Origin: Bugula neritina
Taxonomy: Eukaryota; Animalia; Bryozoa
NCBI GenBank assembly: GCA_964035545.1
Contig: OZ037766.1
Coordinates: forward strand, 12,700,722 to 12,764,721
DNA length: 64,000 nt
Reading direction: 5' to 3'
A model generated the notes under the pieces. The model saw only the letters and a list, made by a program, of their open reading frames with translations, was not told the origin of the DNA and made no database searches. Of this stretch, positions 27,890-64,000 are shown piece by piece. The translations under genes and the position numbers were made by a program. Every line of letters begins with the position of its first letter. Positions within the stretch are counted from its first letter, which is position 1.

Positions 27890-29166
27890 ATGAAGATTAT
27901 AACTTTGTCTATAATAATTGCTCTCAGTGTTGGACTATCAGCAGCACAGATCTCTGATGAGTGTCTCAGCTGCTTGAGACAGGTGAGAATTTCTTCTATA
28001 GTTGTCTGTATGCATATGTGTTATATGCTTTATTACAATTATTATATAGAGAAAGAATGCAACTTTTTACCAGTTTGTTATAACAATTGCAAATTACATT
28101 TATAGTACTATTAAAAAGCTCAGGGAAGTTTATAGTCACCATCCCCTTGAGAAACCTCTGGTAGGAAAGGTTTTTTAAAGACTTATTCACAAATGGCACA
28201 GGGGCAATTATGATTGAATGCTCTTCCTAACATTACAGATGGCCTTTACTGTATATCGAGCCTATGCTTTTGAGTTTGCTAGGCCATTATAGACCACAGC
28301 TGCTACCATTAAAAGATGATTTTAAACTAACCTCCAATTTCACTGTTCAACCATTGCTAATTTATTACATCATAACTATTAATTATTTTTACTAAGTATA
28401 TAAAATCATATCCTATTGAGCCTGCTATATTTAGCTTAATGAAAATTACAGAAACTACAAAAAAAATTTTTTTCTTTTATCTAGTTAATGCATTTATACT
28501 TCTGTAGTACGAAGATGGAGTCTATGACTGCAGAGAGGCATTTTTTCAAATCACTCATTGCGGGAGGTACCACATAACACCCTCATATTGGGAGGAGTGT
28601 GGAAGAAAAGGAACCAGTAATCTTATTTTTATTTTATAAACCCAAATGTACATAATAGTTCTGTGACAACTTTGATTGAAACAATATAATAAAAATAATT
28701 TTTGAAGAATAGCTTTGTTTGAATTGTACAACAGTTGCAAGTTCAGTTTTCATGGGCTTTATTTTAATAGAGAAAACACATTTGATTTTTAAGCAATCCA
28801 TTAGTGTGTTTCTGGCAGTTTAAATAATAATAAATAATGAAATTTGTAATAATAGTAGATTTCAATAATATTATAATAATTATTATAATATTGAAATCTA
28901 CTATTATTACAAATTTTATTTAAATATTTGAATGATAGTATACTATTGCAGCTTGGATTAACTGTGCCCTTGATGATCACTGTGCTTCGGATTGCGTTAG
29001 GATATACTTGAGAAAGCATGCTGCTTGGTGCGCCTTGTGGCTCAGGAAAGAGGTTCATGAGCTAACTTGTGGAGATTATGCAAGAATACATGCTGGTGGA
29101 AAAAATGGCTGCGTTAAGCCCTCAAAAGTAGCTACCAAGGAGTTTATTGACAAATGTATGGAATGA
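27890..29166 (+). CDS. L1: secreted i-type (invertebrate/destabilase) lysozyme-like protein
   Basis: Exons 27890-27982, 28508-28616, 28952-29166: MKIITLSIIIALSVGLSAAQISDECLSCLRQ|YEDGVYDCREAFFQITHCGRYHITPSYWEECGRKGT|TWINCALDDHCASDCVRIYLRKHAAWCALWLRKEVHELTCGDYARIHAGGKNGCVKPSKVATKEFIDKCME*; signal peptide, CLxC, CGxxxI, YWxxCG, CxxDxxCxxxC and CxDYARIHxGGxxGC motifs; TATA-like at ~27760. Confidence 0.85.
28115..28303 (-). mobile_element. tRNA-derived SINE in L1 intron
   Basis: Reverse complement of the same SINE family (ATGCTCTTCCTAACAT...TAGACCACAGCTGCT on +). Confidence 0.75.
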
Positions 29167-31096
29167 AGCAAAGTTTATGAAACTTATAAGCTATATTTCT
29201 AAAATTTAACAATATAATATTATTATTTCACTTCTTCATCTAAATGGTATTTAAATAAAGTTTTATGATCAAAAGTTATCATAAAATGCTATTGATCGAG
29301 ATTTCATCTGTACATAAGGCTTTGTGCTGTAAACTTTGACTGCAACAAATTTTGCAGAGCATAAGCTAAAATATTAAGGAGTACTGTTTCTGTATGCTAA
29401 ATAAAGGCCGCAAAAATTATTGCAATGAACACCTAAAATATAATTCTTAAAGCTTTGGCTTTGATATAGCAACAGAATGGTATACCTGTTTCTTATAGAT
29501 ATAGTATTGTGCGACATATAAATGTGCAGAGGCTAAGCATGTGATTTTACTTCCAATTAAATTGTTTACTACCGGTACTTTTAATATATTACTCAATTTT
29601 CTACTTTATAGTTGAAACTCTATGCTGTAGTAACTAATGCATGTAAAATAATTAAGAGAGAGCATATAGATATTCAAAATATTTTTCTAAAAGCTAATAG
29701 AAACTGGCTTCTGAATTTAAAATTTGCTGCCATATTTTAAAAATATCTCCTCAAAACCTTAATTGTATGCTACAAATTACATTCAAGTGTAAAAATACTA
29801 AAAAAAATAAATTTATCAGTTTAATTTGTAAAAATGCAAATATATTTTCTGCCAGTATGTAGCAAGCTTAGAATTATATATAGTAGGGATTATGGAATAC
29901 TAATATTATACTCAGTGGCTAACTTGTATAAGATCAAAATCCTAAAGAAATGATATTTATAATCTGCTTTAAAGATTGTAAGCAAACATTTATGAAGTCG
30001 TTTGTTTCTATAATCTGTTAGTGTAAAGTATTGTTATATAGAACTTTGTAATAAGATTTGTCTCGCTACCAAGAATTGCGTAAATAATAAGCCACTAGTA
30101 CTGAACTTAAAGAGAAGAATAATCTGGTGCATTCATGCTGCTTGCAATAAACAGGGTGCATAATATAGTATGCGTGCGGCTATATATTTAGCATCAAAAA
30201 TTTCTCAAACTATAGTGCCAGATTCCATAATTTATGTGCAAGTTTGCTTTCTCATGTAGGTTATCACCAACTCTTTTCTACAGATAACTAACTTTAAAAG
30301 ATTTCAAAATTAAATAATTAAGCTAAATAACAAAATTAATTCAATTCACATATAAATAAGCGTTTTTAAACTCAATACAAATACAAATTATATAAATATA
30401 TGAGTCATATATAATAAACGACATTGCAAACAAAATGGCAAATTTTCTCTGTGAATAAAAACACTTTGGTTGGTGGAGGGCATGTCCATATATATGTAAA
30501 TAAGATAGTAAATTGAAAATATAGGTAAAAATCGCAAAGACATAGGCCTACAGAAGATATACACTATTTAATTATTTATGATGATGAAAAATATAAAATT
30601 ATGAAACTGCACCATTCACAGCTACATAACTATCACATTGCAATGGCACTTCATGATATTAGTTTGAAAACAATACATTAGTTTGCTGTATTATAACTGG
30701 TTGAATATTCCTTGCCAAAGTTGATGCTTTAGAACAGGTTGTAACTACAGAGTATATAGATGTATTCTATTGGCTAGGTAAAAGAGTTAGGCTCCACCCT
30801 ATTATGCAATATAAAAGGGTTACTCTACTTCCTACACTTTCGACTTACTGCTTGGTAAATATCGTGAGTTTGAACTATTTAATTTTAATTGCGTGATTAG
30901 AGGTGTCTGTTTCCTTCTTTGCAAAACATTTTTCAACAAAATCTTTTTGTTTGGTTAAAGTAAATATTTTGCTTTAATTCTGCAATTTTCCTACTTGTTA
31001 AAATTATTAGCTATACATTATATTGATATTTCTATGTTCGAAAGTTAATTCATTTTTACCTTTAACAGGTTGTTGTTTCAAATTCACTACATAAAC

Positions 31097-32042
31097 ATGA
31101 AAAACAAGTGTTTGTCTTTTGCCCTATTGTGTCTGACATTTGGCACCATCGGTGCTCAAGTGGATGAGAAATGTCTAAGTTGTTTAAGACAGGTAAGTTG
31201 TAAATAAATGCTTTATAATAACTCTAGTTCATTTTACGTAATTGAATAATTATTTTCATTACGCTGTATTTATATCATATTTTAATGAAGATAAACAGTT
31301 TCTTTTTCAAAATTATTATCTATTTTAATTGTAAGCTTAATTTGTCTACCAGGTATAAGTAAATAAAGTACAAGCTGTGCATACAATGATTTGCAAACTT
31401 TTCTTTTCCAGTCCTAAAACTAAGGCACTTAACCTATTAAACTATTATTTCTTCTGTGCAACTGTTTTTGTAGTATGAAAATGGACCAAGAAATTCATGT
31501 TCCCATAACTTTATCACCAAAACCTCATGCGGTATTTACAAAATCTCTGAGCCTTTCTGGGTTGCATGTGGTCGCCCAGGATATTGTGAGTATGCTACAG
31601 TAAATGTACTATACCGCTCAGTAAAGTAAAAGCTGGTTTATAGTCAAACCAATTAGAATAGTTTAAAATCCTAAGATTTATTGTATAATCAGTGTTATGT
31701 TCTTGTTTTATCTATTCTATTTTGTTTATGCAAGAAATATACCCAAAAGTATTACTTTTATTTATAGTAAGTGCACAGTGAATAACTCTCAAAAACTGTA
31801 ATGTTTTAGCATGGGGACACTGCACTACTGATAGTAAATGTTCAGCAGATTGCTTAAATGCCTACTTTAGAAGATATGCTAGCAGATGTGCTAATATGCT
31901 CAAAAAACCTGTTTCTGAACTTACCTGCGCTGACTACGTAAGACTGCACCACGGACCTGATGGCTGCGGCATGTCTGCTAGCCTTCGACACTCTCGTGCA
32001 ATCACCAACTGCCTGTGGCCTGCAAACATGTTTAGTAGTTAA
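31097..32042 (+). CDS. L2: secreted i-type lysozyme-like protein
   Basis: Exons 31097-31192, 31474-31585, 31810-32042: MKNKCLSFALLCLTFGTIGAQVDEKCLSCLRQ|YENGPRNSCSHNFITKTSCGIYKISEPFWVACGRPGY|SWGHCTTDSKCSADCLNAYFRRYASRCANMLKKPVSELTCADYVRLHHGPDGCGMSASLRHSRAITNCLWPANMFSS*; TATAAAAG at ~30810. Not called in the ORF track. Confidence 0.85.
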
Positions 32043-35745: not shown

Positions 35746-37140
35746 ATGAAAAGATTTCTTGCTGCCATTTTACTTTGTATGGCTCTTGGAGAGGTAGCTG
35801 CTCAAGTGGATGAGAAATGTCTAAGTTGTTTAAGACAGGTAAATTACAGATGGGATTTTTGTATAGCAAGCAAACCTAATTAGACTTTATGTATTTGAAT
35901 GTTATCAATCATGATGCTGAATAGTTGGTATTATTATTGGGATTGTTAATTAACAAAGCAGCATAGTTATTTCTACAAAAAACTACCAGCAGTGTTTAAC
36001 TCTACTTTGCTTTATTGTCAGTGCTTTCTTTTTGCTAGTATGAAGATGGTCCAATTGACTCATGTTATACATCCTTTGGTACCAAGATTGCCTGTGGAGT
36101 TTTCCACATCTCTAAGCCATTCTGGGTTGCTTGTGGAAGTATAGGATACAGTAAGTCAGCTACACTCTGTTATATTTAGTCGTACTTGGTTATACTTGAT
36201 AGCTTGATTATACTTGGTTACTTGATAATTATAACTAATAGCTTGATTATACTTGATTATAATTGATTACTTGATTATACTTGATTATACCTGATCACTT
36301 GATCAATCAGTGTGTAGTATAGGGTAAATATTTTGCTACAATATTCTATAGAAGCAATATAAGAATGATTTACATGCACATAATATTGCTTTTACTTGAT
36401 CTTAGTTGGGTGGTCATTCTAAATACATTGTATTTGAGTTTAAAGACGGATGGCAATTTGAAACTTCTTTCTATATCTAGATATCATAGCAAAACATAGA
36501 TTTTGATGCGTTCTACATTTTTGAAGTAAGGATTTTTACGTATTTTTCATATGTATGTCTAGTATTTTCTTTGCTGTAAGTTTAAATCTGTGCCAAACTA
36601 TAAACTTTGTTCCTATTACTTAAGTTTTGAATTCAGATGTGCTAGTCATGATGATAAGCTAATTGGCTTAAAAATTAATTTGCTTTTGTTGAAGCACGAG
36701 TTAAACACAATTAATTTGTAAGCTTGCTAATGTGTTTATTCGATAACACAAAAGCCCCATAGCGCACATCTTTTTAATGTCAAACTATAATTTTGCAAAC
36801 CTAATTTTTTTGCTTGTGTAACTTTTGGTTTAAGTATGTAGCCAATATCCACTGCAGCTGCATAGTACGTAATTGTGATTACTTTCTAATGTTTTTTTTA
36901 GACTGGGAGCGATGTACTCAAGATGAGTTTTGTGCTGGGGAATGCATACAAAATTTCTTCAGAAGGTTTGCTAGCAGATGTGCCCATCAGCTCAAGAAGC
37001 CTGTTTCTAAACTTACTTGCGCTGACTATGTAAGACTGCACCATGGAGCAGATGGCTGTAGTATGTCTTCTAGCCTTCGACACTCCCGTGCAATTAATAA
37101 CTGCATGTGGCAAGATAACATGTTTGCTAAAAAGAAGTAA
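35746..37140 (+). CDS. L3: secreted i-type lysozyme-like protein
   Basis: Exons 35746-35838, 36039-36150, 36902-37140: MKRFLAAILLCMALGEVAAQVDEKCLSCLRQ|YEDGPIDSCYTSFGTKIACGVFHISKPFWVACGSIGY|NWERCTQDEFCAGECIQNFFRRFASRCAHQLKKPVSKLTCADYVRLHHGADGCSMSSSLRHSRAINNCMWQDNMFAKKK*. Confidence 0.85.
36183..36305. repeat. Degenerate ~10-bp tandem repeat (CTTGATTATA)n in L3 intron 2
   Basis: Visible; a shorter degenerate counterpart lies in the L4 intron (~40410-40490). Confidence 0.7.
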
Positions 37141-39949: not shown

Positions 39950-41594
39950 ATGAAAAGCTCTCTTGCTGTAGTTTTACTTTGTCTGGCTCTTGGAGAGGTA
40001 GCTGCTCAAGTGGATGAGAAATGTCTAAGCTGTTTGAGACAGGTAAATTATAGATAGCTGTTTTGTATAACATGCAAACCTTGTTAGAATTTATGTATTT
40101 GAATGTTATTGAATATAGTTAGTATTACTATAATAATTAATAATTGGCAAAGCAGAACTGTTTTTTTGATGCTGCAAAATTATTTTTATTAAATTTTATT
40201 TCTACAAAAAAACTACCAGCAGGTTTTAACTCTACCTTGTTTTATTGTCAGTGCTTTCTTTTTGCTAGTATGAAGATGGTCCAATTGACTCATGTTATAC
40301 ATCCTTTGGTACCAAGATTGCCTGTGGAGTTTTCCACATCTCTAAGCCATTCTGGGTTGCTTGTGGAAGCATAGGATACAGTAAGTCAGCTGCACTTTAC
40401 CATATTTGATTGTACTTGATTATACTTGCAGTTACATGATTATTTAATAACTTGATTATCCTAGATAAATTGATAATACTTGACTACTTGAAAATTAGTA
40501 TGTTAGTATATGTATAGTAAATATCCTACCACAATATTCTAGAAGCAACTTATAAATGGTTTACAAGCACACTATTACTTTTACTTGATCTTAGTTGGGT
40601 GTTCATCCTATAAATCTTGAGTTTAAAAATAAGTATATGTATGAATGGTAATTTTAAACTTCATTCTTGATCTACATAAAAACTCACGCAAGTTTATGGT
40701 CACTATCCCTGTGAGAAACCCCTGATGGAAAGGGTATATATGTTAAAGCGGGCTATGGACTTATATAAATGAGGCACAAGAGCAATTATGACCGGATGCT
40801 CTTCCTAACATCACCAATGGCCTTTATCTGGGCTCGAACCCATGACCTTCGTGTTTACTAGGCAAACGCTCTAACCCCTAGACCACGGCTGCTCCCTCAT
40901 TCTACATATCATGGCAAAACATTAATTTTTGATACATTTTACACTTTTTAAAAGCAAAAGGTTTTCATGTATTTGTCATATGTCTATAAGCAGTTTCTTT
41001 GGAGCAAATTTAAAACTGTGACAAACTATAAATTTTGTCAATGGTGCAGTGAGAATTGGTTCCTATTGCTTAAGTTTTGAATTCAGATGTGCTACTCATG
41101 ATAATATGTTGCAATAAGCCAATTGGCCTTAAATTAGTTTGCTTTTGTTGGAGCACAAGTTAAACACCAATAATTTGCAAGCTTGCTGATTTGTTTATTT
41201 TTTAACACGTAAGCCCTTTAGCACACATCTTTTTAATGTCAAACTATTTGTGCAAACTTAATTTTCTTTTTTGCTTGTGTAAATTTTGATTTCAATATGT
41301 AGCCAATATCTACAGCTGCATAGTGATTGTAATTACTTTCTGAGACTTTTTATAGACTGGGAGCGATGCACTCAAGATGAGTTTTGCGCTGGAAAATGTA
41401 TTCAGAATTATTTCAGAAGATATGCTAGCAGATGTGCTGATCAACTAAAGAAGCCTGTTTCTGAGCTCACCTGCGCTGACTATGTAAGACTGCACCACGG
41501 ACCTGATGGCTGCAGTATGTCTTCTAGCCTTAGACACTCCGGTGCAATTAGTAACTGCATGTGGCAAGATAACATGTTTAGTAAAAAGAAGTAA
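39950..41594 (+). CDS. L4: secreted i-type lysozyme-like protein (recent duplicate of L3)
   Basis: Exons 39950-40042, 40269-40380, 41356-41594: MKSSLAVVLLCLALGEVAAQVDEKCLSCLRQ|YEDGPIDSCYTSFGTKIACGVFHISKPFWVACGSIGY|NWERCTQDEFCAGKCIQNYFRRYASRCADQLKKPVSELTCADYVRLHHGPDGCSMSSSLRHSGAISNCMWQDNMFSKKK*. Confidence 0.85.
40679..40900 (-). mobile_element. tRNA-derived SINE, best-preserved copy, in L4 intron 2
   Basis: Minus strand GAGCAGCCGTGGTCTAGGGGTTAGAGCGTTTGCCTAGTAAACACGAAGGTCATGGGTTCGAGCCC (A and B boxes, AGT anticodon-like loop); candidate TSD TCTACATA at 40671 and 40901; absent from the paralogous L3 intron. Confidence 0.85.
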
Positions 41595-43562: not shown

Positions 43563-45425
43563 ATGATCAAATTTCATTCTCTAGTAATACTGTGTCTGAC
43601 TATTGGACTAGTAACCTCTTATATGCTGACTGATGAATGTCTCAGCTGTTTAAGACAGGTAATGTGAACTTACAGGTATATTATAATCTACGATTATTTA
43701 ACAAATTGACATTTATAAATTTTTATCTTTTCACAATCTTTAATTTGCACGCATCAACATATTATAATGATGACTGTATATAACATTCATAGAAAAAGAA
43801 GGGAGATAAGACATGCCGGTGGAACTGGGGGAACAAGTCATGTGGAACATATCACATCACGGAGGAGTTTTGGTCTGATGCCTACCAGAGAGGATATTGT
43901 AAGTGTATCTGCCTAATTTTAAGTATAGTTGCTGCGTCATCATATTATATATTCTATACTGACAAGGCAAAAAGCCAGAAGCACATATAAAATATGTTTT
44001 ATAAAATGTACAATAACTCAAACTTCTATTTAAAATATTATTCTAAATATAGAAGTTTGAGTTTGCAGATAAAACTGAAATTATCTGTCACTCAGCACCA
44101 TGTACCGTTGGAAAGCTTAAAACTAATTACACGGATCTAGTTCAACACAAAACTGTATTGCACACTAGAGAAATTAAATTTATGATACATGCCAGTGTGA
44201 AAATGCGTAAATAAAAACCAGTATAGTTATGAACAGTAATATGATACATGTATAAGAGGTTTCACTCCAGATAGATGCTTCCCAGTTAGAAGTTTCCCAG
44301 TTAGATGCTGTTTTTTTATTTTGGTGCTACGTATAGTAATGTACGTGTATATATATATACTTATATAATTGTTGCATTGATTGCTAAACATGAAATAATA
44401 GATAATGTGAATTATCTGAAATAATATTCCAATTTTTCACTTATTTTTGCAGGACAGTAATTAATATACAATAATAATAAACGCTATCTTCAATAAATAC
44501 TTATTAATAAAAATAAGTTTTTAAGCAAGAAGTATAGACAATTCAAAATTAATTAGTTAATGCAGATCAATGGAACTACTTTCAAGACTTAAAGAAAATA
44601 TTTTATACTCTTGTTTCAATAATATATCGTATATATTTCAATAATAAATTACACATAAAATACATATATATCATACCAAAATACATAAATAGCCTCTAAC
44701 TGAAAAGCATCTATTGGAGATGGCACTTTGCAAGACACTGCTGCACAGATTGATTCCAAAATATATTTTTTGATGGGTATTTTGCTATGATCAAAATATA
44801 TCGAATTTGAAAAAAAATTCAATTTTTTAGTAACGAAGTGACCTATAGATCGTTTTTTATAGTAAGTTGATATTTAGATGCTACTTATATTAACAGATGT
44901 TTAAACATATATACGTACCTATTTTATTTTTCAACATTTAATTGTTATAGCTATTATTATTGCAGTTGGCAACTGGTAAAAGTAATGCAGATATCATACG
45001 GCATCAATTTAATTTTGAAGAATTATAAATTTTCTTTATAGAGAGTCTTTGAAGCTCTTATTTGTTTTTTCAATACACATGGCAAACCAGTTCTATCGGC
45101 TATACACAATGGTGATTAATGCAATACCATTAATGTATTTTTAATATACATTATTTTCAAAGATGCTTTATTTGTATGCATTTTTATCCAATGTAGCATA
45201 TTTGCAGCATATGAAACTTGTACTAAGGATGATCAATGTGCTGAGCAGAGCATGATGTCGTACTTCCGTCGATATGGTGAAAGATGTGCCAAACAACTGA
45301 AAAAGGAGACATACCAGCTGACTTGTGGAGATTATATAAGACTGCATGATGGAGGACCTGATGGTTGTTCTAAATTTAGCACTATCAATGCCTCAGGGTC
45401 AATAGACAGGTGCATGTCACGATAG
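43563..45425 (+). CDS. L5: secreted i-type lysozyme-like protein, catalytic Glu replaced by Lys
   Basis: Exons 43563-43658, 43793-43898, 45208-45425: MIKFHSLVILCLTIGLVTSYMLTDECLSCLRQ|KKKGDKTCRWNWGNKSCGTYHITEEFWSDAYQRGY|SYETCTKDDQCAEQSMMSYFRRYGERCAKQLKKETYQLTCGDYIRLHDGGPDGCSKFSTINASGSIDRCMSR*. Not called in the ORF track. Confidence 0.83.
44258..44727. mobile_element. MITE, same family as 27173-27669, in L5 intron 2
   Basis: GGTTTCACTCCAGATAGATGCTTCCCAGTTAGA... ...CTCTAACTGAAAAGCATCTATTGGAGATGGCACT; internal similarity to the 27.2 kb copy (CAAGAAGTATAGA, GCAGATCAA). Confidence 0.75.
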
Positions 45426-46578: not shown

Positions 46579-48020
46579 TCAGGCCCGTATTGGGCATCTC
46601 CTATTCATTTCAGCCCATGCATCGTATGTTTTAGAACTGGAACAGCCGTTATTAGGTCCTCCATCATGTAGTCTAATATAGTCTGCACAAGTCAGCTCAT
46701 AAGGCTTTTTATTTAACTGTTTAGCACATCTGGCACCATATCTGCTAAATAATGTCCTCATACACTCACCAGCGCAGTGATCATCTTTGGCACACTCCTG
46801 AAATCCTGTGAAACACATGCAAAACTTCAAACATGTCTTGGTTGCCATTTTTTATTTTATAGTTTGTAATGGTACTTTTCTAATTTATGAGTTATTAAGC
46901 TGCAGCTACATAAAATGAAAATGCCTATGGCTGTTTTTGAATTTATATGTATTTTCAGCATTTTTAAATCTTTTTAAGTTTGGTAAAAACACTGATATGT
47001 AGAAAAATTAAGAAATGTGGAATGTGTAAAAACTGTCCTATTTTCAACTATGCATTTTTAGCAACACTTGTACTATACTCTTTTTTTACAATTCTAGCTA
47101 CCTATATATAACTTTTTAATAACTATTACTATAACATATACATTAAAATTTTCATAAAACTTAATTGCACTAGAGCTTGATTTAATCTAATAATTTTGAT
47201 GACCATTCAAGAGCTACAACTATATAGGTACTGCAGTTATGTACTAGGGCTATAAATTAGCAATCTAATATTAGCAAGGTATATTTATATAATGCACCCA
47301 TCTGAAATCATCTATAACATATGCAGCCCCAAATTGGGGTGATTTAGTGCAACAGTTGTAGCATGATCTGGGTTTGAAGTTAGGAGAAAGTCAAAGTTGT
47401 AACCTATACTCCCAATTCCAACATTGAGAACCTCAAACTACTGCACTTAGTTAGTTACCCCATCTTGTGGCTACTTTTAAAAAGTTTTCACTAACCTAGT
47501 CCTCTTCTACCACAAGAGTTCCAGAATGAATAAGTCATCACATAGGATCCACAAGTGAAACTTCCCCACCCCTTGTAACAACCATTTTTTGGGGCAGTAG
47601 TGCTTTTGTGCTGTTAAGGATAAAATCACTGGTTTGATACTAAATGCAAACGCCCAGAAAAAAGTACTGGGGACGAAAATTTTATTAACATTGTAATACA
47701 ACTTATAATAAATAATTACTGTAGCATAAAGTTTTTTAAAATAGCTTCGACTATATTTTAAGTAGCAAAAATGTTGAAGTCACTGCCAATTAAGGACTTA
47801 GAATTTTCAAATAATTGCAATACTATAGTCATTATATTAAACAAAAACTCTGCCCTAATTACTAAATAATAATTTATATTATTGTATTAAAAGAACTTTG
47901 AGCTTTAAAGTTTATTTACAATACCTGTCTGATGCAACTGAGACACTCATCTGTCAGTACCTGAGAACCAACCAGTCCAAGAATGAAGCTGAATACCACC
48001 AAACAGCAAACTCTACCCAT
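46579..48020 (-). CDS. L6: secreted i-type lysozyme-like protein (only minus-strand member), Glu replaced by Lys
   Basis: Exons 47925-48020, 47496-47610, 46579-46805: MGRVCCLVVFSFILGLVGSQVLTDECLSCIRQ|HKSTTAPKNGCYKGWGSFTCGSYVMTYSFWNSCGRRGL|GFQECAKDDHCAGECMRTLFSRYGARCAKQLNKKPYELTCADYIRLHDGGPNNGCSSSKTYDAWAEMNRRCPIRA*. Confidence 0.85.
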
Positions 48021-50325: not shown

Positions 50326-51204
50326 TATACTTTGAAAAAAGGCTTTAAGACATGTAGACTCTCAGTGTATTGTCGTTAAAATTCGATTAGATTTAGTTAA
50401 AGCCTGACTATTCAAAGCACACATTGCAATTTAAGCTGCATGAAATAAAATGCTCTTATTACAATGTAGCAGTACAAGAGAGTAAAATATACTAACATAG
50501 ATTATCCGCTGTTCAATGTTGTTACAATAACTATACACTGAAGCTACAGTGTATTAGTTTTTCAATAATGTGAACAACTTTAAATTAAATCTAGTTTATT
50601 GACATAGTACTTAAACAAGCCTATATATGACACACGAAACAATAAATTCTAAAGGAAAAGCCGCTATTCTTCCTTTACTTATAATAGCCAGTTAGTTTAC
50701 CTGCACATTTATGTATTGCTGGGAAAGGTTGAGAGGTTAAATTATTGCCACAACCGAAGTAAGGGAGGTGAGTGTAGATCCAAACTATTATCTTTGTATA
50801 ATACTTTGATTTTGATTTAAAGTTTAGCACATAACTAATGATTTTGTTAACAAGTTTTGAATTGTATGCTAGTATGAAATATGAACTGCAGAAAAATTGT
50901 GTCGGAGATTTGCAGTACTTGAAAGTTGAATTTACAGCTGAAAATTTATTAACTCCACTTCAATCAATACTCTATGTTATAGCGTTTCAAAATATATGCT
51001 GTTTATATTGTTTTAATATATTTTGCGCCACTCATCTCGCAATAAAAATAGCGTTTAATTGTTTGTTGAAGTACCCAAAGATGTGTGCATTAAAATTTAC
51101 ATTATTATTATGTGGAAAATGATCAATTTTCAGGATTTGTCAGCATTGATCTAGTTTCATTTTAAACAGCATATGTGTTTATTTGTTTACAGCTCAGACT
51201 GAAA

Positions 51205-52060
51205 ATGGTTAAAATACACTCAGTGTTGTTGATCAGTTTATTTCTCAGATTGGTAACCTCACAGATACTAACTGAAAAGTGTCTCAGCTGTTTAAGACAG
51301 GTAAACTAGCCAAAAGCTCTTCTAACAAATATTAGTATGTTTTGTCACATTAATTTTCTTGCAAAAACTAACACTGAGCTGAGTACAATAAATAATATTC
51401 ACAGCATAAGGAAGGGACTGAAGGTTGCCGCATGACTTGGACCGACACATTTTGTGGAAAATATGTCATGTCAAAAGGATTCTGGGAAGCTGGTGGTTAC
51501 AGAGGACTTTGTGAGTAGTTCAGCTCCTGTGTTATCATAGTTAATTTTAATTACCTGCAGTCCAAAATTTAAAAGATAAACAACCTAGCTGCAGAATATA
51601 GTTTAAAGTTATACATGTATATATGCATGCTAAGAATATTACATAAGTTCAAGTTTTCAAACATGATGTAAATACAATATTATTGGCAACATATTCAGTT
51701 GCACTTCTCAACTCCCTATATTCAAGTTAATCTGATATAAAACACATTACGTAACAACAGCAGTTTTATTGTTGTGCAATATTTCTTGCAGAGATCTGGT
51801 ATTTTTTATATAAAATTATATTCAAAATTATAACTTTTGCAGCATTTGAGGCTTGTGCTAGTGATGATGATTGTGCCGCTGATACTATGAGGATTTTCTT
51901 CTGTCGATTTGGTGAAAGATGTGCCAAACAACTGAATAAGGAGACATACCAGCTGACTTGCGGAGATTATATAAGACTGCACAATGGCGGAGCTGATGGT
52001 TGTTCCAGATCAGATACTCTGGCTGATTCTAGGTCAATAGAAGGATGTATGTCATATTAG
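51205..52060 (+). CDS. L7: secreted i-type lysozyme-like protein, Glu replaced by Lys
   Basis: Exons 51205-51300, 51405-51510, 51843-52060: MVKIHSVLLISLFLRLVTSQILTEKCLSCLRQ|HKEGTEGCRMTWTDTFCGKYVMSKGFWEAGGYRGL|SFEACASDDDCAADTMRIFFCRFGERCAKQLNKETYQLTCGDYIRLHNGGADGCSRSDTLADSRSIEGCMSY*. Not called in the ORF track. Confidence 0.83.
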
Positions 52061-54650
52061 AAATGCAGCTCAAAAAGACTATCTTTACAGAACATTAAAG
52101 CTGTTGCATGTTTGATTGTTCATTGTAAAAATAATCAAGACATGTATAAGCATTATACTTTATGAAATTTTGTGATATATACCGACGCGGTATATTAAGA
52201 ATAATTTTATGGAAATAAATTTAAGCTTTTGCAAGATGGAGCTTTCAAATTAAAACAGAAATGAGAAATATAGACTGCTATATATACTAGATATAGCATT
52301 CTAGCACAAACTTTGTAATAGAGCAAAACATGCAAAGTTTTTATAAGACTAGCAATTATTAAAAAATATGGCACATGCACATTTCATATTAGATTGTCAT
52401 GTGGAATTAAGCCATTTCAAAATATGTATCGAAAGTTTGCATTAAACATAAAATATATCAATGGATATAAGGCAAAACTAACTTTTGTAAAAAAAATTTC
52501 TCCAAATATTGACACTGCATGGGAATAATTGTTTAATAACGTTTATTTGAGTTTTATGTCCACTTATCAATCTTGGCTACTATAATATGCAGTTATGTTA
52601 CTATCACTATTACTAATAGGCATATATACTACCATTGCATAGTGCTTGAGTCTTTCCATTTTAAATTAATTAATTCCAAAGCAATTTATAGTTTAATACT
52701 TGATATATAAATTTATTTCTAGCCAAAAGATTCTATAAATAAGAATCCAATATTATACTTTCATTGCCTGTAATGGGAGCACATTATATGTGCGATTAAT
52801 ATATATTGAAAATTTTGCCAGCATTCATCAAAGTAAAGAAAAAACTCTTTTAAATATTGTAACTTGTCAGCTATTTATTAAGATTCATACATGAGATCAT
52901 TCACTTTGCGTTTGCTGCGGTATTTAAATGATTACTAAAAGGTTTGTTAATAAATTCTTGAGAAGACAACTTACAATACTAGTCTACAAGACATCACACC
53001 ATTTTAAGGCAGACAAAAGTTTATAGGTCAAATTATTAGTGTTAAAACAAAACACACTGCTACCCTGGAGATGTCTAAAATATTACATAAGATCAAGCAG
53101 TGCCATTTTAAAAGACTGACTGGTTTTTACCACCTACACAACGCTAAATATTTAAGGCTATACAGCTAAGCCTTCTTCTAAATACACTAGTGTTCCCAGC
53201 AAGCTACTTAGCTATAAGCACTCATACTATAGTTTTATATAGATAAGTATTTTAACCACATGGGCCCAACTTAAATAGCTCTTTTGATTAGCAAGCCTTT
53301 TATTAGCTCGGCAGACTGCCTTGGTCAAAACAATAGCAAAGTGTGACCGGAGCACAAGTTGAAAAAAACTCTATAAATATTAATGTGAATTTAAAACTTA
53401 TAATATTTGTATATGAATGTTCTAAAATAAAAAGATTTCTATTTTCCATCATTTGGCTAATATAATTAAAATGAAAAAATTGAGTGAATAAATTAATTCT
53501 GAAACATTTTGTTATATAATGAAGATCTGTCACTGACTTCAAAACGGTGTCTTACTTTTGTTGATTTTTACAGAAGTATACTGCTGGAGTAAAAATTTTA
53601 CTTTGAATAAGATGATCTAATAAGTTAAAGTCTTTGTTATGAATTTTACATTAGAGCGTTATGCTTAACAAATTTATTAGACAAGTTTATTAAAATAGTT
53701 GCAAGTAGAAGTAATAAATAATTATACATACTTTTAAACTACAATTTGCTGTCCTGTTTTAGAAATTGGCTACTTTACATGCCTCATTTATACATAATAC
53801 TGCATTATAATTAGTAGTAGTGTAATAAGTTACAGCAGTTTGACAATCTTCCATTATTACTGCATGCGTTGCTAAGCATTTGCAATATAATTATATGCCA
53901 GTATTTGGTTCTAATCTATTATAAGCTTCACGGGTTTTCATTAGAGAAGTGTTCTGGCAGCAAAAATTAAACTCTTTGGAGAAGTTGCAAAGTCTGACTT
54001 TGAGTGCTTATGTAGTTAAAGCCTCACTTTTGAAAACAGATTAAATATACAAGAAAAGTATATAAACATTCTAATAACCTGGATATTGAAACGAACTCTA
54101 AGAATAGACCTACAGAGTATACAAATAAATTCCATAGCCTTCTACTACTTCTAAAGTAGCCAGATACTGAATTTTATTTGAAGGTAAGTTGATAAGATAA
54201 ACTTTTTATTTCAAACATTAAATAATAATATTTTTAGGTAAAAATAAACTAGTTTTTGGTCACACTATGGTAAAAAAATCAATAATACTCCTAAATGCAA
54301 AAGAATAACAGGTTTTTTGTATGAAAATTATAAAAAATAAATAATAAATAGGGTGAAAAAGACAGGAGTGTGTTGTTTTGAGCTAAAAAGACTTAACTTC
54401 TAAATATTTTCCTCAATGTAAAAGCAACTTTTACAGCCTTATTATACTAAATAGTTAGATCAGCTTTAAAACATTTTTGAACTATCATTTCGAATATTTA
54501 AATTAGCTCATCAATCCTTAATTTTTTCTAAATCTGTTGAAACGTAATATGGTGATCTTAGACAGTTTTATGTTATGTTTTACAAGATGCAAAATTTACC
54601 TACTCATTTATGTTTCTCAAACGCTATAGAATAATATATTTAACAGAAAA

Positions 54651-56082
54651 ATGAGTAGAGTTTGCTGTTTGGTGGTATTCAGCTTCATTCTTGGACTGGT
54701 TGGTTCTCAGATACTGACAGATGAGTGTCTCAGTTGCGTCAGACAGGTATTGTAAATAAACTTTAAAGCTCAAAGTTCTTTTAATACTCTAATAGAAATT
54801 ATTATTTAGTAATTATGATTAGGGCAGAGTTTTTGTTTAATATAATGACTATAGTATTGCAATTATTTGAAAATTCTAAGTTCTTAATTGGCAGTGACTT
54901 CAACACTTTTGCTATAATTAATTAATGCATATTATAGAAGTTATTTTAAAAAATTATGCTACAGCAATTATTTATGATAATTTGTATTACAATGTTGATG
55001 AAATTTTCGTCCCCAGTACTTTTGTTTGAGCATTTGCATTTATAGTACCAAACCAGTGATTTTATCCTTAACAGCACAAAAGCACTACTGCCCCAAAAAT
55101 TGGTTGTCATATGGGTTGGGGAAGTTTCACTTGTGGATCCCATGTGATAACTTATTCATTCTGGAAAGATTGTGGTAGAAGAGGACTAGGTTAGTGAAAA
55201 CTTTTTAAAAGTAGCCTAGAGATGGGGTAACTGAGTGTAGTAGTTTGAGATTCTCAATGTTGGAATTGAAAGTTTAGGTTACAACTTTGACTCTCCCCAA
55301 CTTCAAACCCAGATCCTGCTATAACTGCTGCATTTAATCACCCCAATTTATAGGAGGCTGCATATATTACAGATGATTTCAGATGGGTGCATTATATAAA
55401 TATACCTTGCTAATACTAGATTGGTAATTCATAGCCCCAGTACATAACCAGTATTTAGTTATAGCACTTGAATGGCCATCAGCATTGTTAGATTAAATCA
55501 AGAGCGCTAAGCTTTAATCAAATTAAGTTTTATGAGAATTCTAATGTAATTATTAAAAAGTTATATATAGGTAGCTAGAATGGTAAAAAAAAGGGTGTAG
55601 TAAAAGTGTGCTAAAAATGCATAGCTTAAAATATGACATTTTTGTATACATTTCAAATTTTTCAATTTTTATGATATCAGTGTTTGTAGCAAACTTAATT
55701 ATAAATATTCAAAATGCTGAAAATATACATACAAATTCAAAAACAGCCTTCTGTAGCTATAAGCATTTCATTTTATGCAGCTGCAGCTTAACAACTCATA
55801 AATTATAAAATGAAAATGGCAACCAAAACATTTTTGAAGTTTTGCATGTGTTTCACAGGATTTCAGGAGTGTACCATTGATGATCAATGCAGTGGAGAGT
55901 GTATGAGGACATACTTTCGCAGATTTGGCCCCAGATGTGCTAAACAGTTGAATAAAGAGACATACCAGCTGACTTGCGCAGACTATATTAGACTGCATGA
56001 TGGAGGACCTGATGGTTGTTCCAGTTCTAAAACATACGATGCGTGGGCTGAAATGAATAGGAGATGCCCAATACGGGCCTGA
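54651..56082 (+). CDS. L8: secreted i-type lysozyme-like protein (inverted duplicate of L6), Glu replaced by Lys
   Basis: Exons 54651-54746, 55075-55189, 55859-56082: MSRVCCLVVFSFILGLVGSQILTDECLSCVRQ|HKSTTAPKIGCHMGWGSFTCGSHVITYSFWKDCGRRGL|GFQECTIDDQCSGECMRTYFRRFGPRCAKQLNKETYQLTCADYIRLHDGGPDGCSSSKTYDAWAEMNRRCPIRA*. Confidence 0.85.
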
Positions 56083-58722: not shown

Positions 58723-59813
58723 ATGATCAAGATTTACTCAGTATTTATATTATGTCTGGCTGTTGGGCTGGTAACCTCCCAAGTACTGACTGATGATTGT
58801 CTCAGCTGTTTAAGACAGGTAATGGGTAAAAATAAACTTCATCGCAAGCAAAAACTCAACATCTGCTTTTTAACAAATAACTACGATGATACCAATGCCA
58901 TATATGTCACTACATTACTTATTTTGACAGCATAAGCTAGGTGGAAATGATTGTCGCTGGAATTGGGGAAACCGATCATGTGGAAAGTATCACATATCGT
59001 TTGATTTTTGGAACGCTTGTGGTAGACCAGGATATGGTGAGTTTAGTGCATGCAGCTAGAGTTAAAAGCTGCAAATCTCCTAGCATTACGTCACTAGAAA
59101 CTAAAAGTCGTATCCCTTTTATAAAAACTTACTCAAATATGATGAACTGTAATGCTGTATAAATAGTCCAGTTAGATTTGAACCTTAAGTACAACTAATG
59201 TGGAACATAAACTGATTTGGTAGTTGTGTAGTAACTCAAAGTAGCCTACATAACAGGTTTAAAATTATTATTAGAACAGCTACAAAATCCAATACCATTA
59301 TTGACAGTTTCGGAGTTCCTCTTTAAAATACATTATTTTAAAACATTATAATATTACGAAAATATAATTGTGATTTTTAACTTAACAACCAATTCAAATA
59401 ATGCTACTCAATTGTTGTTTATGTTTTTATATAAATTGTTTGCTCTAGTTATACACGCTGCATGCACAATTTCTTATCTTTTATAACAGTTGAAATTGTA
59501 AAACCAAATGTTTTATGTATATCAGGTACAACAACTTTGTTGCATCATGTTTACAATTTCAATTTATTTCAGAAATATGAATATTTTTACAGGTTATCAA
59601 GAGTGTACTGTTGATGATCAATGTGCCGGTGAATGCATGAGAGCCTACTTTACTAGATATGGTGTAAGATGTGCTAAAGCTTTGAATAAAGACACGGTTG
59701 ATTTGACTTGTGGAGACTATATAAGACTGCATGATGGAGGACCTGATGGTTGCGGAAAAAGTGATACTAAAAGCGCAGCCAGTACCATAAACGTTTGCAT
59801 GTTAATGTCATAA
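58723..59813 (+). CDS. L9: secreted i-type lysozyme-like protein, Glu replaced by Lys
   Basis: Exons 58723-58818, 58931-59036, 59593-59813: MIKIYSVFILCLAVGLVTSQVLTDDCLSCLRQ|HKLGGNDCRWNWGNRSCGKYHISFDFWNACGRPGY|GYQECTVDDQCAGECMRAYFTRYGVRCAKALNKDTVDLTCGDYIRLHDGGPDGCGKSDTKSAASTINVCMLMS*. Confidence 0.85.
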
Positions 59814-60915: not shown

Positions 60916-60954
<39 letters not shown>

Positions 60955-61000: not shown

Positions 61001-61091
<91 letters not shown>

Positions 61092-61993: not shown

Positions 61994-62691
61994 GTTCACA
62001 AAATCAGTGAGTATAACTTATTATTTTGAACCTATACAATGACGTCTAAACAAGAAAATTCAAATTATAGCTTTATTAACTGTCTTATATTCTTTGAAAA
62101 GAACAATCAACTTTACTATACGCATGCTTTTCTCACTATTGAAAAGTTAAGGACTATTAGGAACAGATTAAATCGCTGAGTGCAGAGCAATTCTTGAGCA
62201 CTACTTGAATTGAATGTAGATTCTTCTTAGTCTCTGAACTTCAAAGATTATTACGGCAAATACTTTATAAGCTGCAAACGTAAGCTAACTAATAATGTTT
62301 AGCAGAGCTTTATACCACCTAAGTCCCTCTGCAACAAACAGTTTCTTAAAGTTTTATTTAAATTGTAAACCTATAATAACAATATTAAGCTACCTAAAAA
62401 TAAAATTACAAGCAGATAAATCGGCTGTGACATAAAGATTTCATCAGAATAACCTGCCCTATGAACTCTATAAGCTTTAAACAGTCTTTACGTACACTAG
62501 CCTAAATCTGTTTTGCTGCAAGAAGGTAAGCAGGGTCTTTTCAGCCATCTTGGTATTGGGGTTTGTGATTTGTAGTATTTGAGTTTTTTGTGTTTAAAAT
62601 TAGATTTGTAATTTGTAATTTGTTTATAGGCAATCATCAACTGCTCAGTTGCATTTGCTTGATTACTTTAATAGTATATTCAACAGAGAAA

Positions 62692-64000
62692 ATGAGCAAG
62701 TTATACTCTCTAGTAATATTATGTCTGGCTGTTGGACTAGTAACTCCTCAGATACTGACTGATGAATGTCTCAGTTGCATAAGACAGGTACGGTGAATTT
62801 ATTAGCCTTAGAACCTTATATATACTATACCATCTGTATACCTTTAAAAGTTTAAAGAAGAGGGAATTAAGCTGCAAAAATTAATGCTTATCGTAACAGT
62901 TTGATTGTTGTTTGATCATCACATTAATATCGTAATTAAAGAAACTGTTTAACTGATACAACTAAGTTGATGACATCGTTTGACAGAATAAGAAAGGTAG
63001 CAATACTTGCTCTTCTTGGAGCCTGATGCACAGTCAAACTTGTGGAAAGTATCTTATCACACATTCATTTTGGAATGATTGCGGTAGAAGAGGAGTTGGT
63101 GAGAAATGTTTATACATTATTTTATCTAAGTTATGAGAAATGTAGTTACTATAGTTTTTAATATAAGCTAAGACTACATCTAATACATAATAAGTTTTTG
63201 AAAATTGGTTTTTTAAATGGTTGGTTTAATGTAGAGACCAACTAAAATACTGGTGGCAATTAATTTTACCTGAGGCACTCTTTTTAAACCTATTCATAGC
63301 ATGCTTTGCAGCAATTATAATAAAATCTATTATATATAATAATAATTGCATTTTTATAGTTGAACTGAAACATCGATGAAAGTTTTCTTTATGTTATTTT
63401 TTTCGTTCCTACTCCACAAAGTAAAGCATTATTTGGAAACTATAAAATCTAGCTATTTTGCTAGTTTACGATGACTAATGCCTCTAAAGCAATTGAAACT
63501 CCAATTTGGTCAACAAAGTGTGTCAGCCAACGTTTTCTAATGCTTAATGCCACATCTTATGATATCGCTTATAAGCAAGTATTTATACGTGACTTAATGA
63601 CAAAATAGGTGATCTAGAGTAGAAGCAAAATGCTAGTTTGGCAATTCAAATTTCCAATCCACGCCAGCTTTAAATTTTTGAATTATACTTTATCTAATCT
63701 CTCAAATAAATTACTATTTATTCTGTTACATAACTAATTAGCAATGAATGCATTTATCAAACTTTCATATATATATTTTGCCTTGCTGGTTATAAAAGAA
63801 TGCACTTTTTTACAGACTATGACAATGTATAACAAATGCCTGCTTTTCCATAAGCGTCAATGTTATGACTGTTAATTTATTGCATAAATATTGCGCTTTA
63901 TATAAATATTTTTGATGAGCAAATTATACTGAAATTTCTTTTATTTCCATTTCAGGTTTTTCAGAGTGCACTAATGACAATCACTGTGCAGGAGAATGTA
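62692..64000 (+). CDS. L10: secreted i-type lysozyme-like protein, Glu replaced by Lys; truncated by the window end
   Basis: Exons 62692-62787, 62987-63098, 63956->64000: MSKLYSLVILCLAVGLVTPQILTDECLSCIRQ|NKKGSNTCSSWSLMHSQTCGKYLITHSFWNDCGRRGV|GFSECTNDNHCAGEC... Confidence 0.83.

What the first reader, a model, noticed from the sequence alone, without database searches (positions are those of the whole stretch)
27890..64000. Tandem array of at least 10 divergent i-type lysozyme-like genes that appear to have abandoned canonical muramidase chemistry
Seen: ten intact-looking secreted paralogues with identical intron positions and phases. Established: classical i-type lysozymes (Tapes/Ruditapes lysozyme, leech destabilase) have CLxCxCxxES...CxxDxGSxSCGxFQI...HNGGP, with catalytic Glu and Asp. 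Here none has Asp at the CxxD position, none has the Gln of FQI (it is H/K/V/L), and none has Ser after Glu. The His of the HNGG motif, linked to isopeptidase activity, is kept in all nine complete genes. Inference: a lineage-specific repertoire of lysozyme-fold pseudoenzymes or neo-functional proteins (glycan/peptidoglycan binders, antimicrobials, symbiont recognition or isopeptidases). The array continues past the window edge.
Basis: partly seen in the sequence, partly recalled or inferred. Interest (0 to 1): 0.85.

Follow-up and report, generated by a model that had tools for sequence, protein, structure and literature searches.

The report
Bryozoan array of catalytically disabled lysozyme-like genes
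The ruby bryozoan Bugula neritina carries a tandem array of 16 intact, secreted, selectively maintained lysozyme-fold genes (ten of them in this window) that have lost one or both catalytic residues, a further and unusually large example of the 'lysozyme that no longer cuts' already known from insects and crustaceans.

Summary
The window (Bugula neritina chromosome 2) has nine complete genes and one cut-off gene. All have three coding exons, GT-AG introns in identical positions and phases, and a match to Pfam Destabilase. G6 is on the minus strand.

The array continues about 22 kb past the window. It holds 16 divergent genes, one decayed copy and, at the far end, one canonical lysozyme (G17).

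- **Catalytic residues:** no divergent gene has the catalytic Asp or the Gln of YQI. The catalytic Glu survives only in G1-G4.
- **Not pseudogenes:** all 16 reading frames are open. dN/dS is 0.02-0.45 against a diverged sibling assembly. A spliced cDNA contig confirms the G7 model.
- **Fold:** models of two orthologues match leech destabilase (TM 0.81-0.85).
- **His argument:** the conserved His is invariant across the whole family. The proposed Ser-His-Glu isopeptidase triad is complete only in G2.

Most likely these are non-lytic binding or antibacterial proteins with paralogue-specific loops. That is inferred, not shown. Muramidase-deficient i-type lysozymes are already known in arthropods, so this is a new member of a known kind. 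Other first readers of this scan had already noted the continuation of the array and a second cluster.

The parts
27890..29166 (+). G1, 138 aa, Glu kept (Q-Y-E-D-G), Asp lost. Exons 27890-27982, 28508-28616, 28952-29166.
   Evidence: Model with GT-AG introns and an open frame. Exon 3 matches PF05497 at E 2.3e-10. Longest branch of the array clade. Its orthologue in the draft assembly looks broken.
31097..32042 (+). G2, 146 aa, Glu kept (Q-Y-E-N-G), Asp lost. The only gene with Glu, the Ser51-equivalent and His together. Exons 31097-31192, 31474-31585, 31810-32042.
   Evidence: Orthologue P0006 (KAF6019433.1, Bugula neritina) differs at 2 of 146 residues; dN/dS 0.02. AlphaFold model of P0006 has pLDDT 91 and TM 0.81-0.85 to destabilase 8bbu.
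35746..37140 (+). G3, 147 aa, Glu kept. Exons 35746-35838, 36039-36150, 36902-37140.
   Evidence: Segmental duplicate of G4 (35410-38126 matches 39593-42540 at about 76% identity). dN/dS is 0.09 against G4 and 0.11-0.12 against the orthologue.
39950..41594 (+). G4, 147 aa, Glu kept. Exons 39950-40042, 40269-40380, 41356-41594. Intron 2 carries a high-copy repeat at about 40648-41021.
   Evidence: dN/dS 0.13-0.15.
43563..45425 (+). G5, 139 aa, Glu replaced by Lys (Q-K-K-K-G), Asp replaced by Asn. Lacks one Cys pair. Exons 43563-43658, 43793-43898, 45208-45425.
   Evidence: Orthologue P0152 (EB796_008546, Bugula neritina) differs at 17 of 139 residues; dN/dS 0.22-0.24; the loop is identical.
46579..48020 (-). 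G6, 145 aa, minus strand, Glu replaced by Lys (Q-H-K-S). Exons 48020-47925, 47610-47496, 46805-46579.
   Evidence: Arm of an inverted duplication (46352-49722 matches 56302-52859). dN/dS is 0.45 both against G8 and against the orthologue.
50716..52517 (+). G7, 139 aa, Glu replaced by Lys (Q-H-K-E-G). Lacks the same Cys pair as G5. Non-coding 5' exon about 50716-50767. Coding exons 51205-51300, 51405-51510, 51843-52060. 3'UTR to about 52517.
   Evidence: The spliced cDNA contig L019 (SRR4020085) has a contiguous 139-aa ORF, and its blocks end at my exon boundaries within the few bases that overlapping BLAST blocks allow. dN/dS 0.15. AlphaFold model of P0003 has pLDDT 93.8 and TM 0.84-0.85 to 8bbu/8bbw.
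54651..56082 (+). G8, 144 aa, Glu replaced by Lys. Exons 54651-54746, 55075-55189, 55859-56082.
58723..59813 (+). G9, 140 aa, Glu replaced by Lys (Q-H-K-L-G), Asp replaced by Asn, Gln replaced by His. Exons 58723-58818, 58931-59036, 59593-59813.
   Evidence: Residue-level alignment of exon 2 to destabilase 8bbu residues 22-49 and of exon 3 to residues 52-114.
62692..64000 (+). G10, cut by the window end (complete gene 140 aa, stop at 64170), Glu replaced by Lys (Q-N-K-K-G). Exons 62692-62787, 62987-63098, 63956 onward.
   Evidence: The remainder was read from the genome (locus L001).

Best explanation
This is a lineage-specific tandem array in the bryozoan Bugula neritina, shaped by repeated gene duplication and occasional loss. 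It encodes small secreted proteins stabilised by six disulfides. They keep the i-type lysozyme (destabilase, GH22i) fold but have given up the retaining Glu/Asp glycosidase mechanism.

Two grades exist. G1-G4 (and a stray copy, U1, about 170 kb upstream) keep the acid Glu but lack the Asp. G5-G16 are a single clade in which the Glu became Lys by one GAA-to-AAA change and has stayed Lys ever since. The second grade cannot be a muramidase of the classical kind.

The most likely function is non-lytic binding of bacterial or other glycan surfaces in the old substrate cleft. Consequences would be agglutination, opsonisation or non-enzymatic killing, as reported for muramidase-deficient crustacean i-type lysozymes. 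The stretch between the Glu/Lys position and the C-G-x-Y strand differs strongly between paralogues but is conserved within each orthologue. It could therefore supply different specificities.

- **Shown:** gene structure, homology, fold, residue states, intactness, purifying selection, and transcription and splicing of one member.
- **Inferred:** secretion, loss of activity, and binding as the function.
For: - **Gene models and homology:**
- **Residue states** across 27 genomic paralogues.
- **Phylogeny:** the array clade has 99/99 support. The Lys clade is monophyletic (90/87) and needs only one change. Both Lys codons are used.
- **Selection between paralogues:** pairwise dN/dS 0.09-0.50.
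- **Selection between orthologues:** dN/dS 0.02-0.45 against a sibling assembly whose introns are only 75-89% identical.
- **Loop region:** its dN is 2-9 times that of the rest between some paralogue pairs (for example G12, G13 and G15; not G3/G4 or G6/G8). Pooled omega between orthologues is only 0.15.
- **Cysteines:** the same two Cys are missing together in G5, G7 and U1. This fits loss of a disulfide partner pair in folded proteins.
- **Transcription:** spliced cDNA contig for the G7 orthologue.
- **Fold:** confident models, TM 0.81-0.85 to leech destabilase and 0.76-0.81 to clam lysozymes.
- **Precedent:** muramidase-negative but antibacterial or binding i-type lysozymes in arthropods (PMC10126035 Table 1, PMC13736114).
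Against: - No biochemical data exist, and no ligand was tested.
- Net charge of the mature domains ranges from -2 to +9 and is no higher than in the canonical paralogues. There is no uniform cationic signature for membrane attack.
- Pairwise and orthologue omega in the loop is below 1, so diversifying selection is not demonstrated.
- G1-G4 keep the Glu and could still be weak or unconventional glycosidases.
- Expression evidence covers one gene only, and it comes from a sibling lineage. No RNA run was served for this window.
- Structures were predicted for orthologues (P0003, P0006), not for the window's own spliced products.
Confidence: 0.55

Rival explanations
1. The Glu-keeping members (G1-G4) are still glycosidases. 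They would work with a single acid residue, as goose-type lysozymes and lytic transglycosylases do, or with a nearby alternative carboxylate. They could serve digestion of filtered bacteria. Only the Lys clade would be non-enzymatic.
For: - Glu is conserved in G1-G4 and in the stray copy U1.
- G2 is under very strong constraint (dN/dS 0.02).
- G1 has Glu two residues after the loop Cys (C-R-E-A), next to the usual Asp position.
- Single-Glu mechanisms in related lysozyme-fold enzymes are established knowledge. Destabilase is structurally close to lytic transglycosylases (PMC10126035).
Against: - The Asp position, the Ser-x-Ser loop and the Gln of the GH22i signature SCGPYQIK are all changed.
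- The loop has a different length in G1-G4.
- There is no assay.
Confidence: 0.2
2. The proteins are isopeptidases or another kind of hydrolase that uses the conserved His.
For: - His is present in all 16 genes.
- Two crustacean homologues are reported as muramidase-negative but isopeptidase-positive (PMC10126035 Table 1).
Against: - His is invariant in 26 diverse family members, whatever their activity.
- In the proposed Ser51-His112-Glu34 triad, Glu is Lys in G5-G16.
- The Ser51-equivalent is kept only in G2, G5, G9, G15 and G16.
- Only G2 has all three residues.
Confidence: 0.1
3. The proteins are decoys that soak up bacterial proteinaceous inhibitors of i-type lysozyme (PliI-type). This would protect the few active lysozymes.
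For: - A PliI-lysozyme complex is among the closest structures (4pj2).
- The array sits beside an active-looking lysozyme, G17.
- The cleft loops are variable.
Against: - This is purely circumstantial.
- Inhibitors of this kind insert into the active site, which is heavily remodelled here (from my own knowledge, not checked here).
- No test was run.
Confidence: 0.05
4. The genes are decaying duplicates with no function.
For: - One decayed copy lies between G12 and G13.
- An exon-1-like relic lies at 26981-27016.
- The G1 orthologue looks broken in the draft assembly.
Against: - All 16 reading frames are open, with canonical splice sites.
- Omega is well below 1 in every comparison, while introns have diverged 11-25%.
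- A spliced transcript exists.
- The Cys framework is conserved.
Confidence: 0.03

Closest known systems
Leech destabilase-lysozyme (Hirudo medicinalis; PDB 8bbu, 8bbw) and clam i-type lysozymes (Tapes japonica 2dqa, Meretrix lusoria 3ab6)
   Same: - Same Pfam family, PF05497.
- Same fold (TM 0.76-0.85).
- Same C-G-x-aromatic strand, the same H-x-G-G-P-x-G-C loop, and most of the disulfide framework.
- All are secreted proteins of about 115 residues.
   Different: - The Glu34/Asp46 dyad is incomplete (G1-G4) or absent (G5-G16).
- The Gln of YQIK is replaced.
- There are 12 Cys, not 14.
- The loop carrying Asp46 to Ser51 is rebuilt.
Muramidase-deficient i-type lysozyme homologues of arthropods: all insect i-type lysozymes; Scylla paramamosain Splys-i; Procambarus clarkii Pclysi1/2; Penaeus monodon; Harmonia axyridis
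   Same: - The lysozyme fold is kept and the catalytic residues are lost.
- The genes are nevertheless retained by selection.
- Non-enzymatic antibacterial or binding roles are proposed or shown (PMC10126035 Table 1; PMC13736114).
   Different: - The phylum differs (Bryozoa).
- The Bugula genes cluster with canonical Bugula paralogues, which hints at an independent origin (Bugula sequences only).
- Here 16 copies stand in one array.
- Among the database relatives retrieved, Ser, Val, Ala or Gln is the usual non-Glu residue at the Glu position. Here it is a conserved Lys.
Other lysozyme-fold or glycosidase-fold proteins that became non-enzymes: alpha-lactalbumin, sperm lysozyme-like proteins (PDB 4yf2), chitinase-like lectins
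   Same: Catalytic carboxylates are lost, while the fold and, in some cases, sugar binding are retained. This is established knowledge. 4yf2 appears as a weak fold hit.
   Different: These belong to unrelated sub-families (c-type lysozyme, GH18). They offer an analogy of principle only.

Membership tests
i-type lysozyme / Destabilase (Pfam PF05497, GH22i) | Significant match to the family profile | tested here: met
   Exon 3 of all nine complete genes gives E 1e-8 to 1e-10, at 34.6-42 bits against a cut-off of 26.2. Exon 2 gives colinear weak hits, except for G7. The genome-wide scan is.
i-type lysozyme / Destabilase (Pfam PF05497, GH22i) | i-type lysozyme three-dimensional fold | tested here: met
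   AlphaFold models of the orthologues P0003 (G7) and P0006 (G2) have pLDDT 93.8 and 91.0. The best PDB matches are 8bbu/8bbw (TM 0.81-0.85), then 2dqa, 3ab6 and 4pj2. The window's own spliced products were not folded.
i-type lysozyme / Destabilase (Pfam PF05497, GH22i) | Catalytic Glu (Glu34 of destabilase) | tested here: not met
   Glu is present in G1-G4 only. G5-G10, and G11-G16 beyond the window, have Lys.
i-type lysozyme / Destabilase (Pfam PF05497, GH22i) | Catalytic Asp (Asp46 of destabilase) | tested here: not met
   The position holds A, N, S, G or T in the ten window genes, and also R or K in G11-G16. Asp is present only in G17, C1a and C1b.
i-type lysozyme / Destabilase (Pfam PF05497, GH22i) | Signature (L/D/Y/N)-S-C-G-P-Y-Q-I-K (as quoted in PMC11083476) | tested here: not met
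   The array genes have C-G-x-[YFH]-[HKVLIF]-[IMV]. G12 and G13 have C-S in place of C-G. G17 has S-C-G-K-Y-Q-I-K.
i-type lysozyme / Destabilase (Pfam PF05497, GH22i) | Fourteen-cysteine (seven-disulfide) framework | tested here: not met
   Most genes have 12 Cys. G5 and U1 have 10 and G7 has 11. The canonical Bugula paralogues also have 12, so the loss of one pair is lineage-wide. Destabilase has 14 (PMC10126035).
i-type lysozyme / Destabilase (Pfam PF05497, GH22i) | Muramidase activity | not testable with these tools
   This needs a recombinant protein assay.
Destabilase-type isopeptidase (proposed Ser51-His112-Glu34 triad, PMC10126035) | All three triad residues present | tested here: not met
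   His is in all genes. Glu is only in G1-G4. The Ser51-equivalent is only in G2, G5, G9, G15 and G16. The full set is in G2 alone. The triad itself is a proposal, not established.
Muramidase-deficient i-type lysozyme-like proteins (arthropod examples) | Family fold with catalytic dyad lost, yet under purifying selection | tested here: met
Muramidase-deficient i-type lysozyme-like proteins (arthropod examples) | Common descent with the arthropod branch | not tested
   My tree holds Bugula paralogues only. The array clade groups with canonical Bugula genes, which suggests an independent loss.

The most novel reading that the evidence does not exclude
The array is a germline-encoded recognition repertoire. 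Each paralogue presents its own conserved loop over the former active-site cleft. In the Lys clade the charge-reversed Lys helps to hold anionic microbial ligands without cutting them. The colony could then discriminate, tolerate or police bacteria, including its vertically transmitted bryostatin-producing symbiont, without lysing them.
Probability: 0.12. Interest if true: 0.75.

Novelty: new member of a known kind. Interest (0 to 1): 0.45.

Why it matters
- Bryozoans are almost unexplored immunologically. Bugula neritina is a model for a defensive bacterial symbiosis (bryostatins).
- Only four of about 28 i-type lysozyme genes in this genome keep both catalytic residues. The rest include a 16-gene array under purifying selection. 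This points to a large investment in non-lytic lysozyme-fold proteins.
- The finding gives concrete candidates for testing how a lysozyme fold is re-used for binding.
- It is a warning for annotation: UniRef auto-names these proteins 'lysozyme'.
- It extends the recurrent loss of catalysis in this family from arthropods to a lophotrochozoan.
- The concept itself is not new.

Tried and rejected
- **RNA evidence from public runs:** The look-up of sequencing runs returned three runs and none is recorded as RNA. Read laying was given 5,601 letters, within the operators' 6,000 limit. It showed genomic-type contigs only, with no joints at the annotated introns. This neither supports nor refutes expression.
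- **Database homologues:** The search for homologous proteins with an exon-3 frame found only one fragment. The exhaustive profile search was needed to reach full-length orthologues.
- **Positive selection in the exon-2 loop:** NG86 omega in the loop is 0.2-0.8 between paralogues, with saturated dS in several pairs. Pooled omega between orthologues is 0.15. Diversifying selection is not demonstrated. PAML-type site tests were not available.
- **Uniform cationic antimicrobial character:** rejected. pI ranges from 5.6 to 9.1.
- **Leech origin:** I considered this from the best PDB hit and rejected it once database names and the assembly statistics identified Bugula neritina.
- **Substrate-subsite residues of clam lysozymes:** no usable paper in the library.
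- **Disulfide map of destabilase:** not given in PMC10126035. That the jointly lost Cys are partners remains an inference.
- Searches were made exon by exon, by reference. Folds used the stored orthologues P0003 and P0006. Joined models were used only inside local scripts for alignment, tree and dN/dS.


Full report
**Source of the window.** The window is G000:C2:12700722-12764721 of a 216,009,554-base assembly in 321 pieces. The largest piece is 35,640,107 bases. A full-length database protein that differs from my G2 model at 2 of 146 residues is KAF6019433.1, 'hypothetical protein EB796_022240 [Bugula neritina]', on GCA_010799875.2. That accession is the 2020 draft of B. neritina (PMC7576161). 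The 2024 Darwin Tree of Life assembly tzBugNeri2.1 has 216.00 Mb, 320 scaffolds plus the mitochondrion, and a longest scaffold of 35.64 Mb (PMC11480708). The window is therefore B. neritina chromosome 2. Introns of the draft assembly are only 75-89% identical to the window, and synonymous divergence is 0.11-0.33. The draft thus represents a diverged sibling lineage, which makes it a useful outgroup.

**Checking the observation.** Six-frame motif scans and tblastn located ten exon-1 units ending in C-[LF]-S-C-x-R-Q, ten exon-2 units and the exon-3 units. I read the boundaries base by base.
- Every exon 1 ends at ...AGACAG|GT (phase 0).
- Every exon 2 starts after AG and ends one base into a codon before GT (phase 1).
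- Every exon 3 starts after AG.

Joining the exons gives nine open frames of 138-147 residues, all with GT-AG introns. The tenth gene starts at 62692, and its third exon begins at 63956 and runs off the window. G6 lies on the minus strand. Exon 3 of each complete gene matches Pfam Destabilase above the curated cut-off. Eight of nine exon-2 peptides give weak colinear matches to profile positions 14-43; G7 gave none.

**Extent of the family.** A six-frame scan of the genome with PF05497 gave 28 exon-level hits. I fetched the flanks and the other clusters and built models.
- The array goes on for about 22 kb: G10 (complete, stop at 64170), G11-G14 (minus strand), G15 and G16 (plus strand). All are intact with GT-AG introns.
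- A decayed copy with stop codons in exons 1 and 2 lies between G12 and G13.
- At the far end sits G17, whose intron 1 has a GC donor.
- G17 has I-E-G-G, C-N-W-D-V-G-S-Y-S-C-G-K-Y-Q-I-K and H-N-G-G-P, so it looks like an active lysozyme. Its best PDB relatives are leech destabilase 8bbu/8bbw and the clam lysozymes.
- A second cluster on chromosome 1 holds further canonical copies (C1a, C1b, and C1e with a frame-disrupting internal duplication) and divergent ones (C1c, C1d, C1f).
- Three more divergent copies and one stray copy lie elsewhere.

**Residue states.** In the 27-sequence alignment and table:
- The acid Glu is kept in G1-G4, U1, G17 and the chromosome-1 genes. It is Lys in all of G5-G16.
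- The Asp and the Gln of YQI survive only in G17, C1a and C1b.
- The His of H-x-G-G is in every array gene.

A direct alignment of G9 exon 2 to destabilase residues 22-49 shows Asp replaced by Asn and Gln by His. The Lys codon is AAA in seven genes and AAG in five, while Glu is GAA in G1-G4. One G-to-A transition explains the change, and synonymous turnover with an unchanged residue speaks for selection on the Lys. 'No Ser after Glu' and the missing third Cys of CxxCxC are lineage-wide and also true of G17, so they are not signs of lost function. Most genes have 12 Cys. G5, G7 and U1 lack the same two Cys together, which fits loss of a disulfide partner pair. That inference was not verified on coordinates.

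**Are they real genes?**
1. All 16 frames are open.
2. Pairwise NG86 dN/dS between paralogues is 0.09-0.50.
3. Against the sibling assembly or the cDNA, dN/dS is 0.02 (G2), 0.11-0.12 (G3), 0.13-0.15 (G4), 0.22-0.24 (G5), 0.45 (G6) and 0.15 (G7).
4. A 963-base Logan contig from SRR4020085 starts with adapter sequence. It carries a contiguous 139-codon frame 94% identical in protein to G7. It maps to the window as four blocks whose edges agree with my exon 1/2 and 2/3 boundaries to within the few bases that overlapping BLAST blocks allow, plus a 5' non-coding exon near 50716-50767. This is a spliced mRNA, so at least this member is transcribed and my splice model is right.

Public runs offered for this window were all DNA-like and said nothing about expression.

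**Phylogeny.** In a maximum-likelihood tree of the 27 domains, G1-G16 plus U1 form one clade (99/99) apart from the canonical genes. The Lys genes form one clade (90/87), so a single change accounts for them. Self-comparison shows how the array grew. G3/G4 is a direct duplication of about 2.7 kb. G6/G8 are arms of an inverted duplication of about 3.4 kb around G7. G11, G12, G13 and G15 share a repeated unit.

**The variable loop.** Between some paralogue pairs (for example G12, G13 and G15) the stretch from the Glu/Lys position to the C-G-x-Y strand has 2-9 times the non-synonymous divergence of the rest; the youngest pairs (G3/G4, G6/G8) show no such excess. Its omega stays below 1 where it can be measured. 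Between orthologues the loop is nearly unchanged: it is identical in G2 and G5 and differs at one to three residues in G3, G4, G6 and G7. Pooled omega is 0.15 for the loop, 0.10 for the rest and 0.48 for the leader peptide. Each paralogue therefore keeps its own loop. That pattern fits diversified, then conserved, specificities. It does not prove diversifying selection.

**Structure.** The rule against sending joined models to tools was kept. Instead I folded stored orthologues from the profile search with a 26-sequence alignment.
- P0003 (G7 orthologue, Lys type): pLDDT 93.8, TM 0.84-0.85 to 8bbu/8bbw and about 0.80 to 2dqa, 3ab6 and 4pj2.
- P0006 (G2 orthologue, Glu type): pLDDT 91.0, TM 0.81-0.85 to 8bbu.

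The fold is kept in both grades.

**What they probably do.** Destabilase uses Glu34/Asp46 for muramidase activity. Its isopeptidase site is disputed, and the latest proposal is Ser51-His112-Glu34 (PMC10126035).
- The Lys clade lacks both dyad residues, so a classical glycosidase mechanism is excluded for it. This is an inference from established lysozyme chemistry.
- G1-G4 keep the Glu only. A weak or single-acid mechanism cannot be excluded.
- The isopeptidase triad is complete only in G2, and the His is invariant in 26 diverse family members.
- Muramidase-negative homologues with binding, agglutinating or non-enzymatic antibacterial action are documented in crabs, crayfish, shrimp and a ladybird. 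[quoted passage not shown]
- Among the database relatives I retrieved, nearly half of the domains have a non-Glu residue at this position, usually Ser, Val, Ala or Gln. Lys occurs outside Bugula in only one protein, from Seison nebaliae.

I therefore read the array as non-lytic binding or antibacterial proteins. Confidence is high that the Lys clade is not a muramidase and moderate that binding is the function. Charge is not uniformly basic, which argues against a simple cationic-peptide mode of action.

**Novelty.** The genes are already in GenBank as hypothetical proteins, and UniRef auto-names them 'lysozyme'. I found no paper in the held library that links B. neritina with this family. Leech genomes carry 3-9 destabilase genes (PMC12866057), whereas this genome has about 28, most of them non-canonical. 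The principle is known. What is specific here is the phylum, the size of the array, the conserved Glu-to-Lys clade and the paralogue-specific loops. I class it as a new member of a known kind and of moderate interest. Other first readers of this scan had already flagged the continuation of the array, the chromosome-1 cluster and the loop. I checked those points myself as described above.

Noticed in passing
window 40648-41021 (intron 2 of G4); also 44201-44574 (intron 2 of G5) and 27218-27656: High-copy interspersed repeats. Contig depth reaches 1e5-1e6 at 40648-41021, and the loose ends contain tRNA-like GGTTCGAACC motifs, which suggests a tRNA-derived SINE. It interrupts the G3/G4 duplication at 40678-40901. 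The sequence at 44278-44714 is 70% identical to 27218-27656.
   Followed up: partly
window 46352-49722 and 52859-56302: An inverted duplication (86% identity in the inner 2.4 kb, 77% in the outer 1 kb) carries G6 and G8 as arms around G7. Both arms end at (TA)n microsatellites.
   Followed up: partly
window 26981-27016 (+): An exon-1-like relic reading Q-V-S-L-E-C-L-S-C-T-R-Q followed by GT. It has no start codon or leader and lies just upstream of G1. It is probably a remnant of a lost array member (tblastn E 0.005).
   Followed up: partly
continued window coordinates about 71684-71788 and 71926-72003 (beyond the window, between G12 and G13): A decayed array member. Exon 1 has two stop codons and exon 2 has one.
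   Followed up: partly
continued window coordinates 84917-85782 (G17, beyond the window): A canonical-looking lysozyme at the end of the array. Its intron 1 appears to use a GC-AG splice site (AAG|GCAAGG).
   Followed up: partly
L023:6905-8161 (draft assembly GCA_010799875.2): The G1 orthologue in the sibling assembly has TA in place of the exon-1 GT donor and an exon 2 that is one base shorter. It may be a pseudogene there, or an assembly error.
   Followed up: no
G000:C1 about 666600-667650 (C1e; L005): An otherwise canonical chromosome-1 lysozyme has an internal duplication of the C-A-A-S-D-S-C-A stretch that shifts the frame in exon 3.
   Followed up: no
window versus L020-L023: The two public 'Bugula neritina' assemblies differ by 11-25% in introns and by dS 0.11-0.33 in these genes. 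This fits different members of the known cryptic species complex.
   Followed up: partly
window 56150-56700: Another reader reported a type I hammerhead ribozyme at 56303-56568. Rfam finds nothing at gathering thresholds in the whole window. It finds no hammerhead family even at E up to 1 in this stretch, only AT-rich chance hits.
   Followed up: partly
window 6141-9477 (-), 17589-18818 (-): Upstream neighbours. One set of exons has ubiquitin-specific-protease Cys-box and His-box motifs (judged by eye, not run through Pfam). There is also an intronless 409-aa ORF that looks like a seven-helix receptor.
   Followed up: no
window 19715-20534 and 60256-61179: Long compound (CA/TG)n-type microsatellites of about 0.8-0.9 kb. 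The second causes the strong GC-skew dip at 60-62 kb.
   Followed up: no
P0018, P0021, P0022, P0036, P0042, P0048, P0096 (database proteins of other organisms): Proteins of 800-1200 aa with three or four Destabilase domains. Most of these domains have Ser, Val, Thr or Gln at the Glu position. Some also have short dockerin-like or EF-hand matches. The non-catalytic lysozyme fold seems to be used as a repeat module elsewhere.
   Followed up: partly
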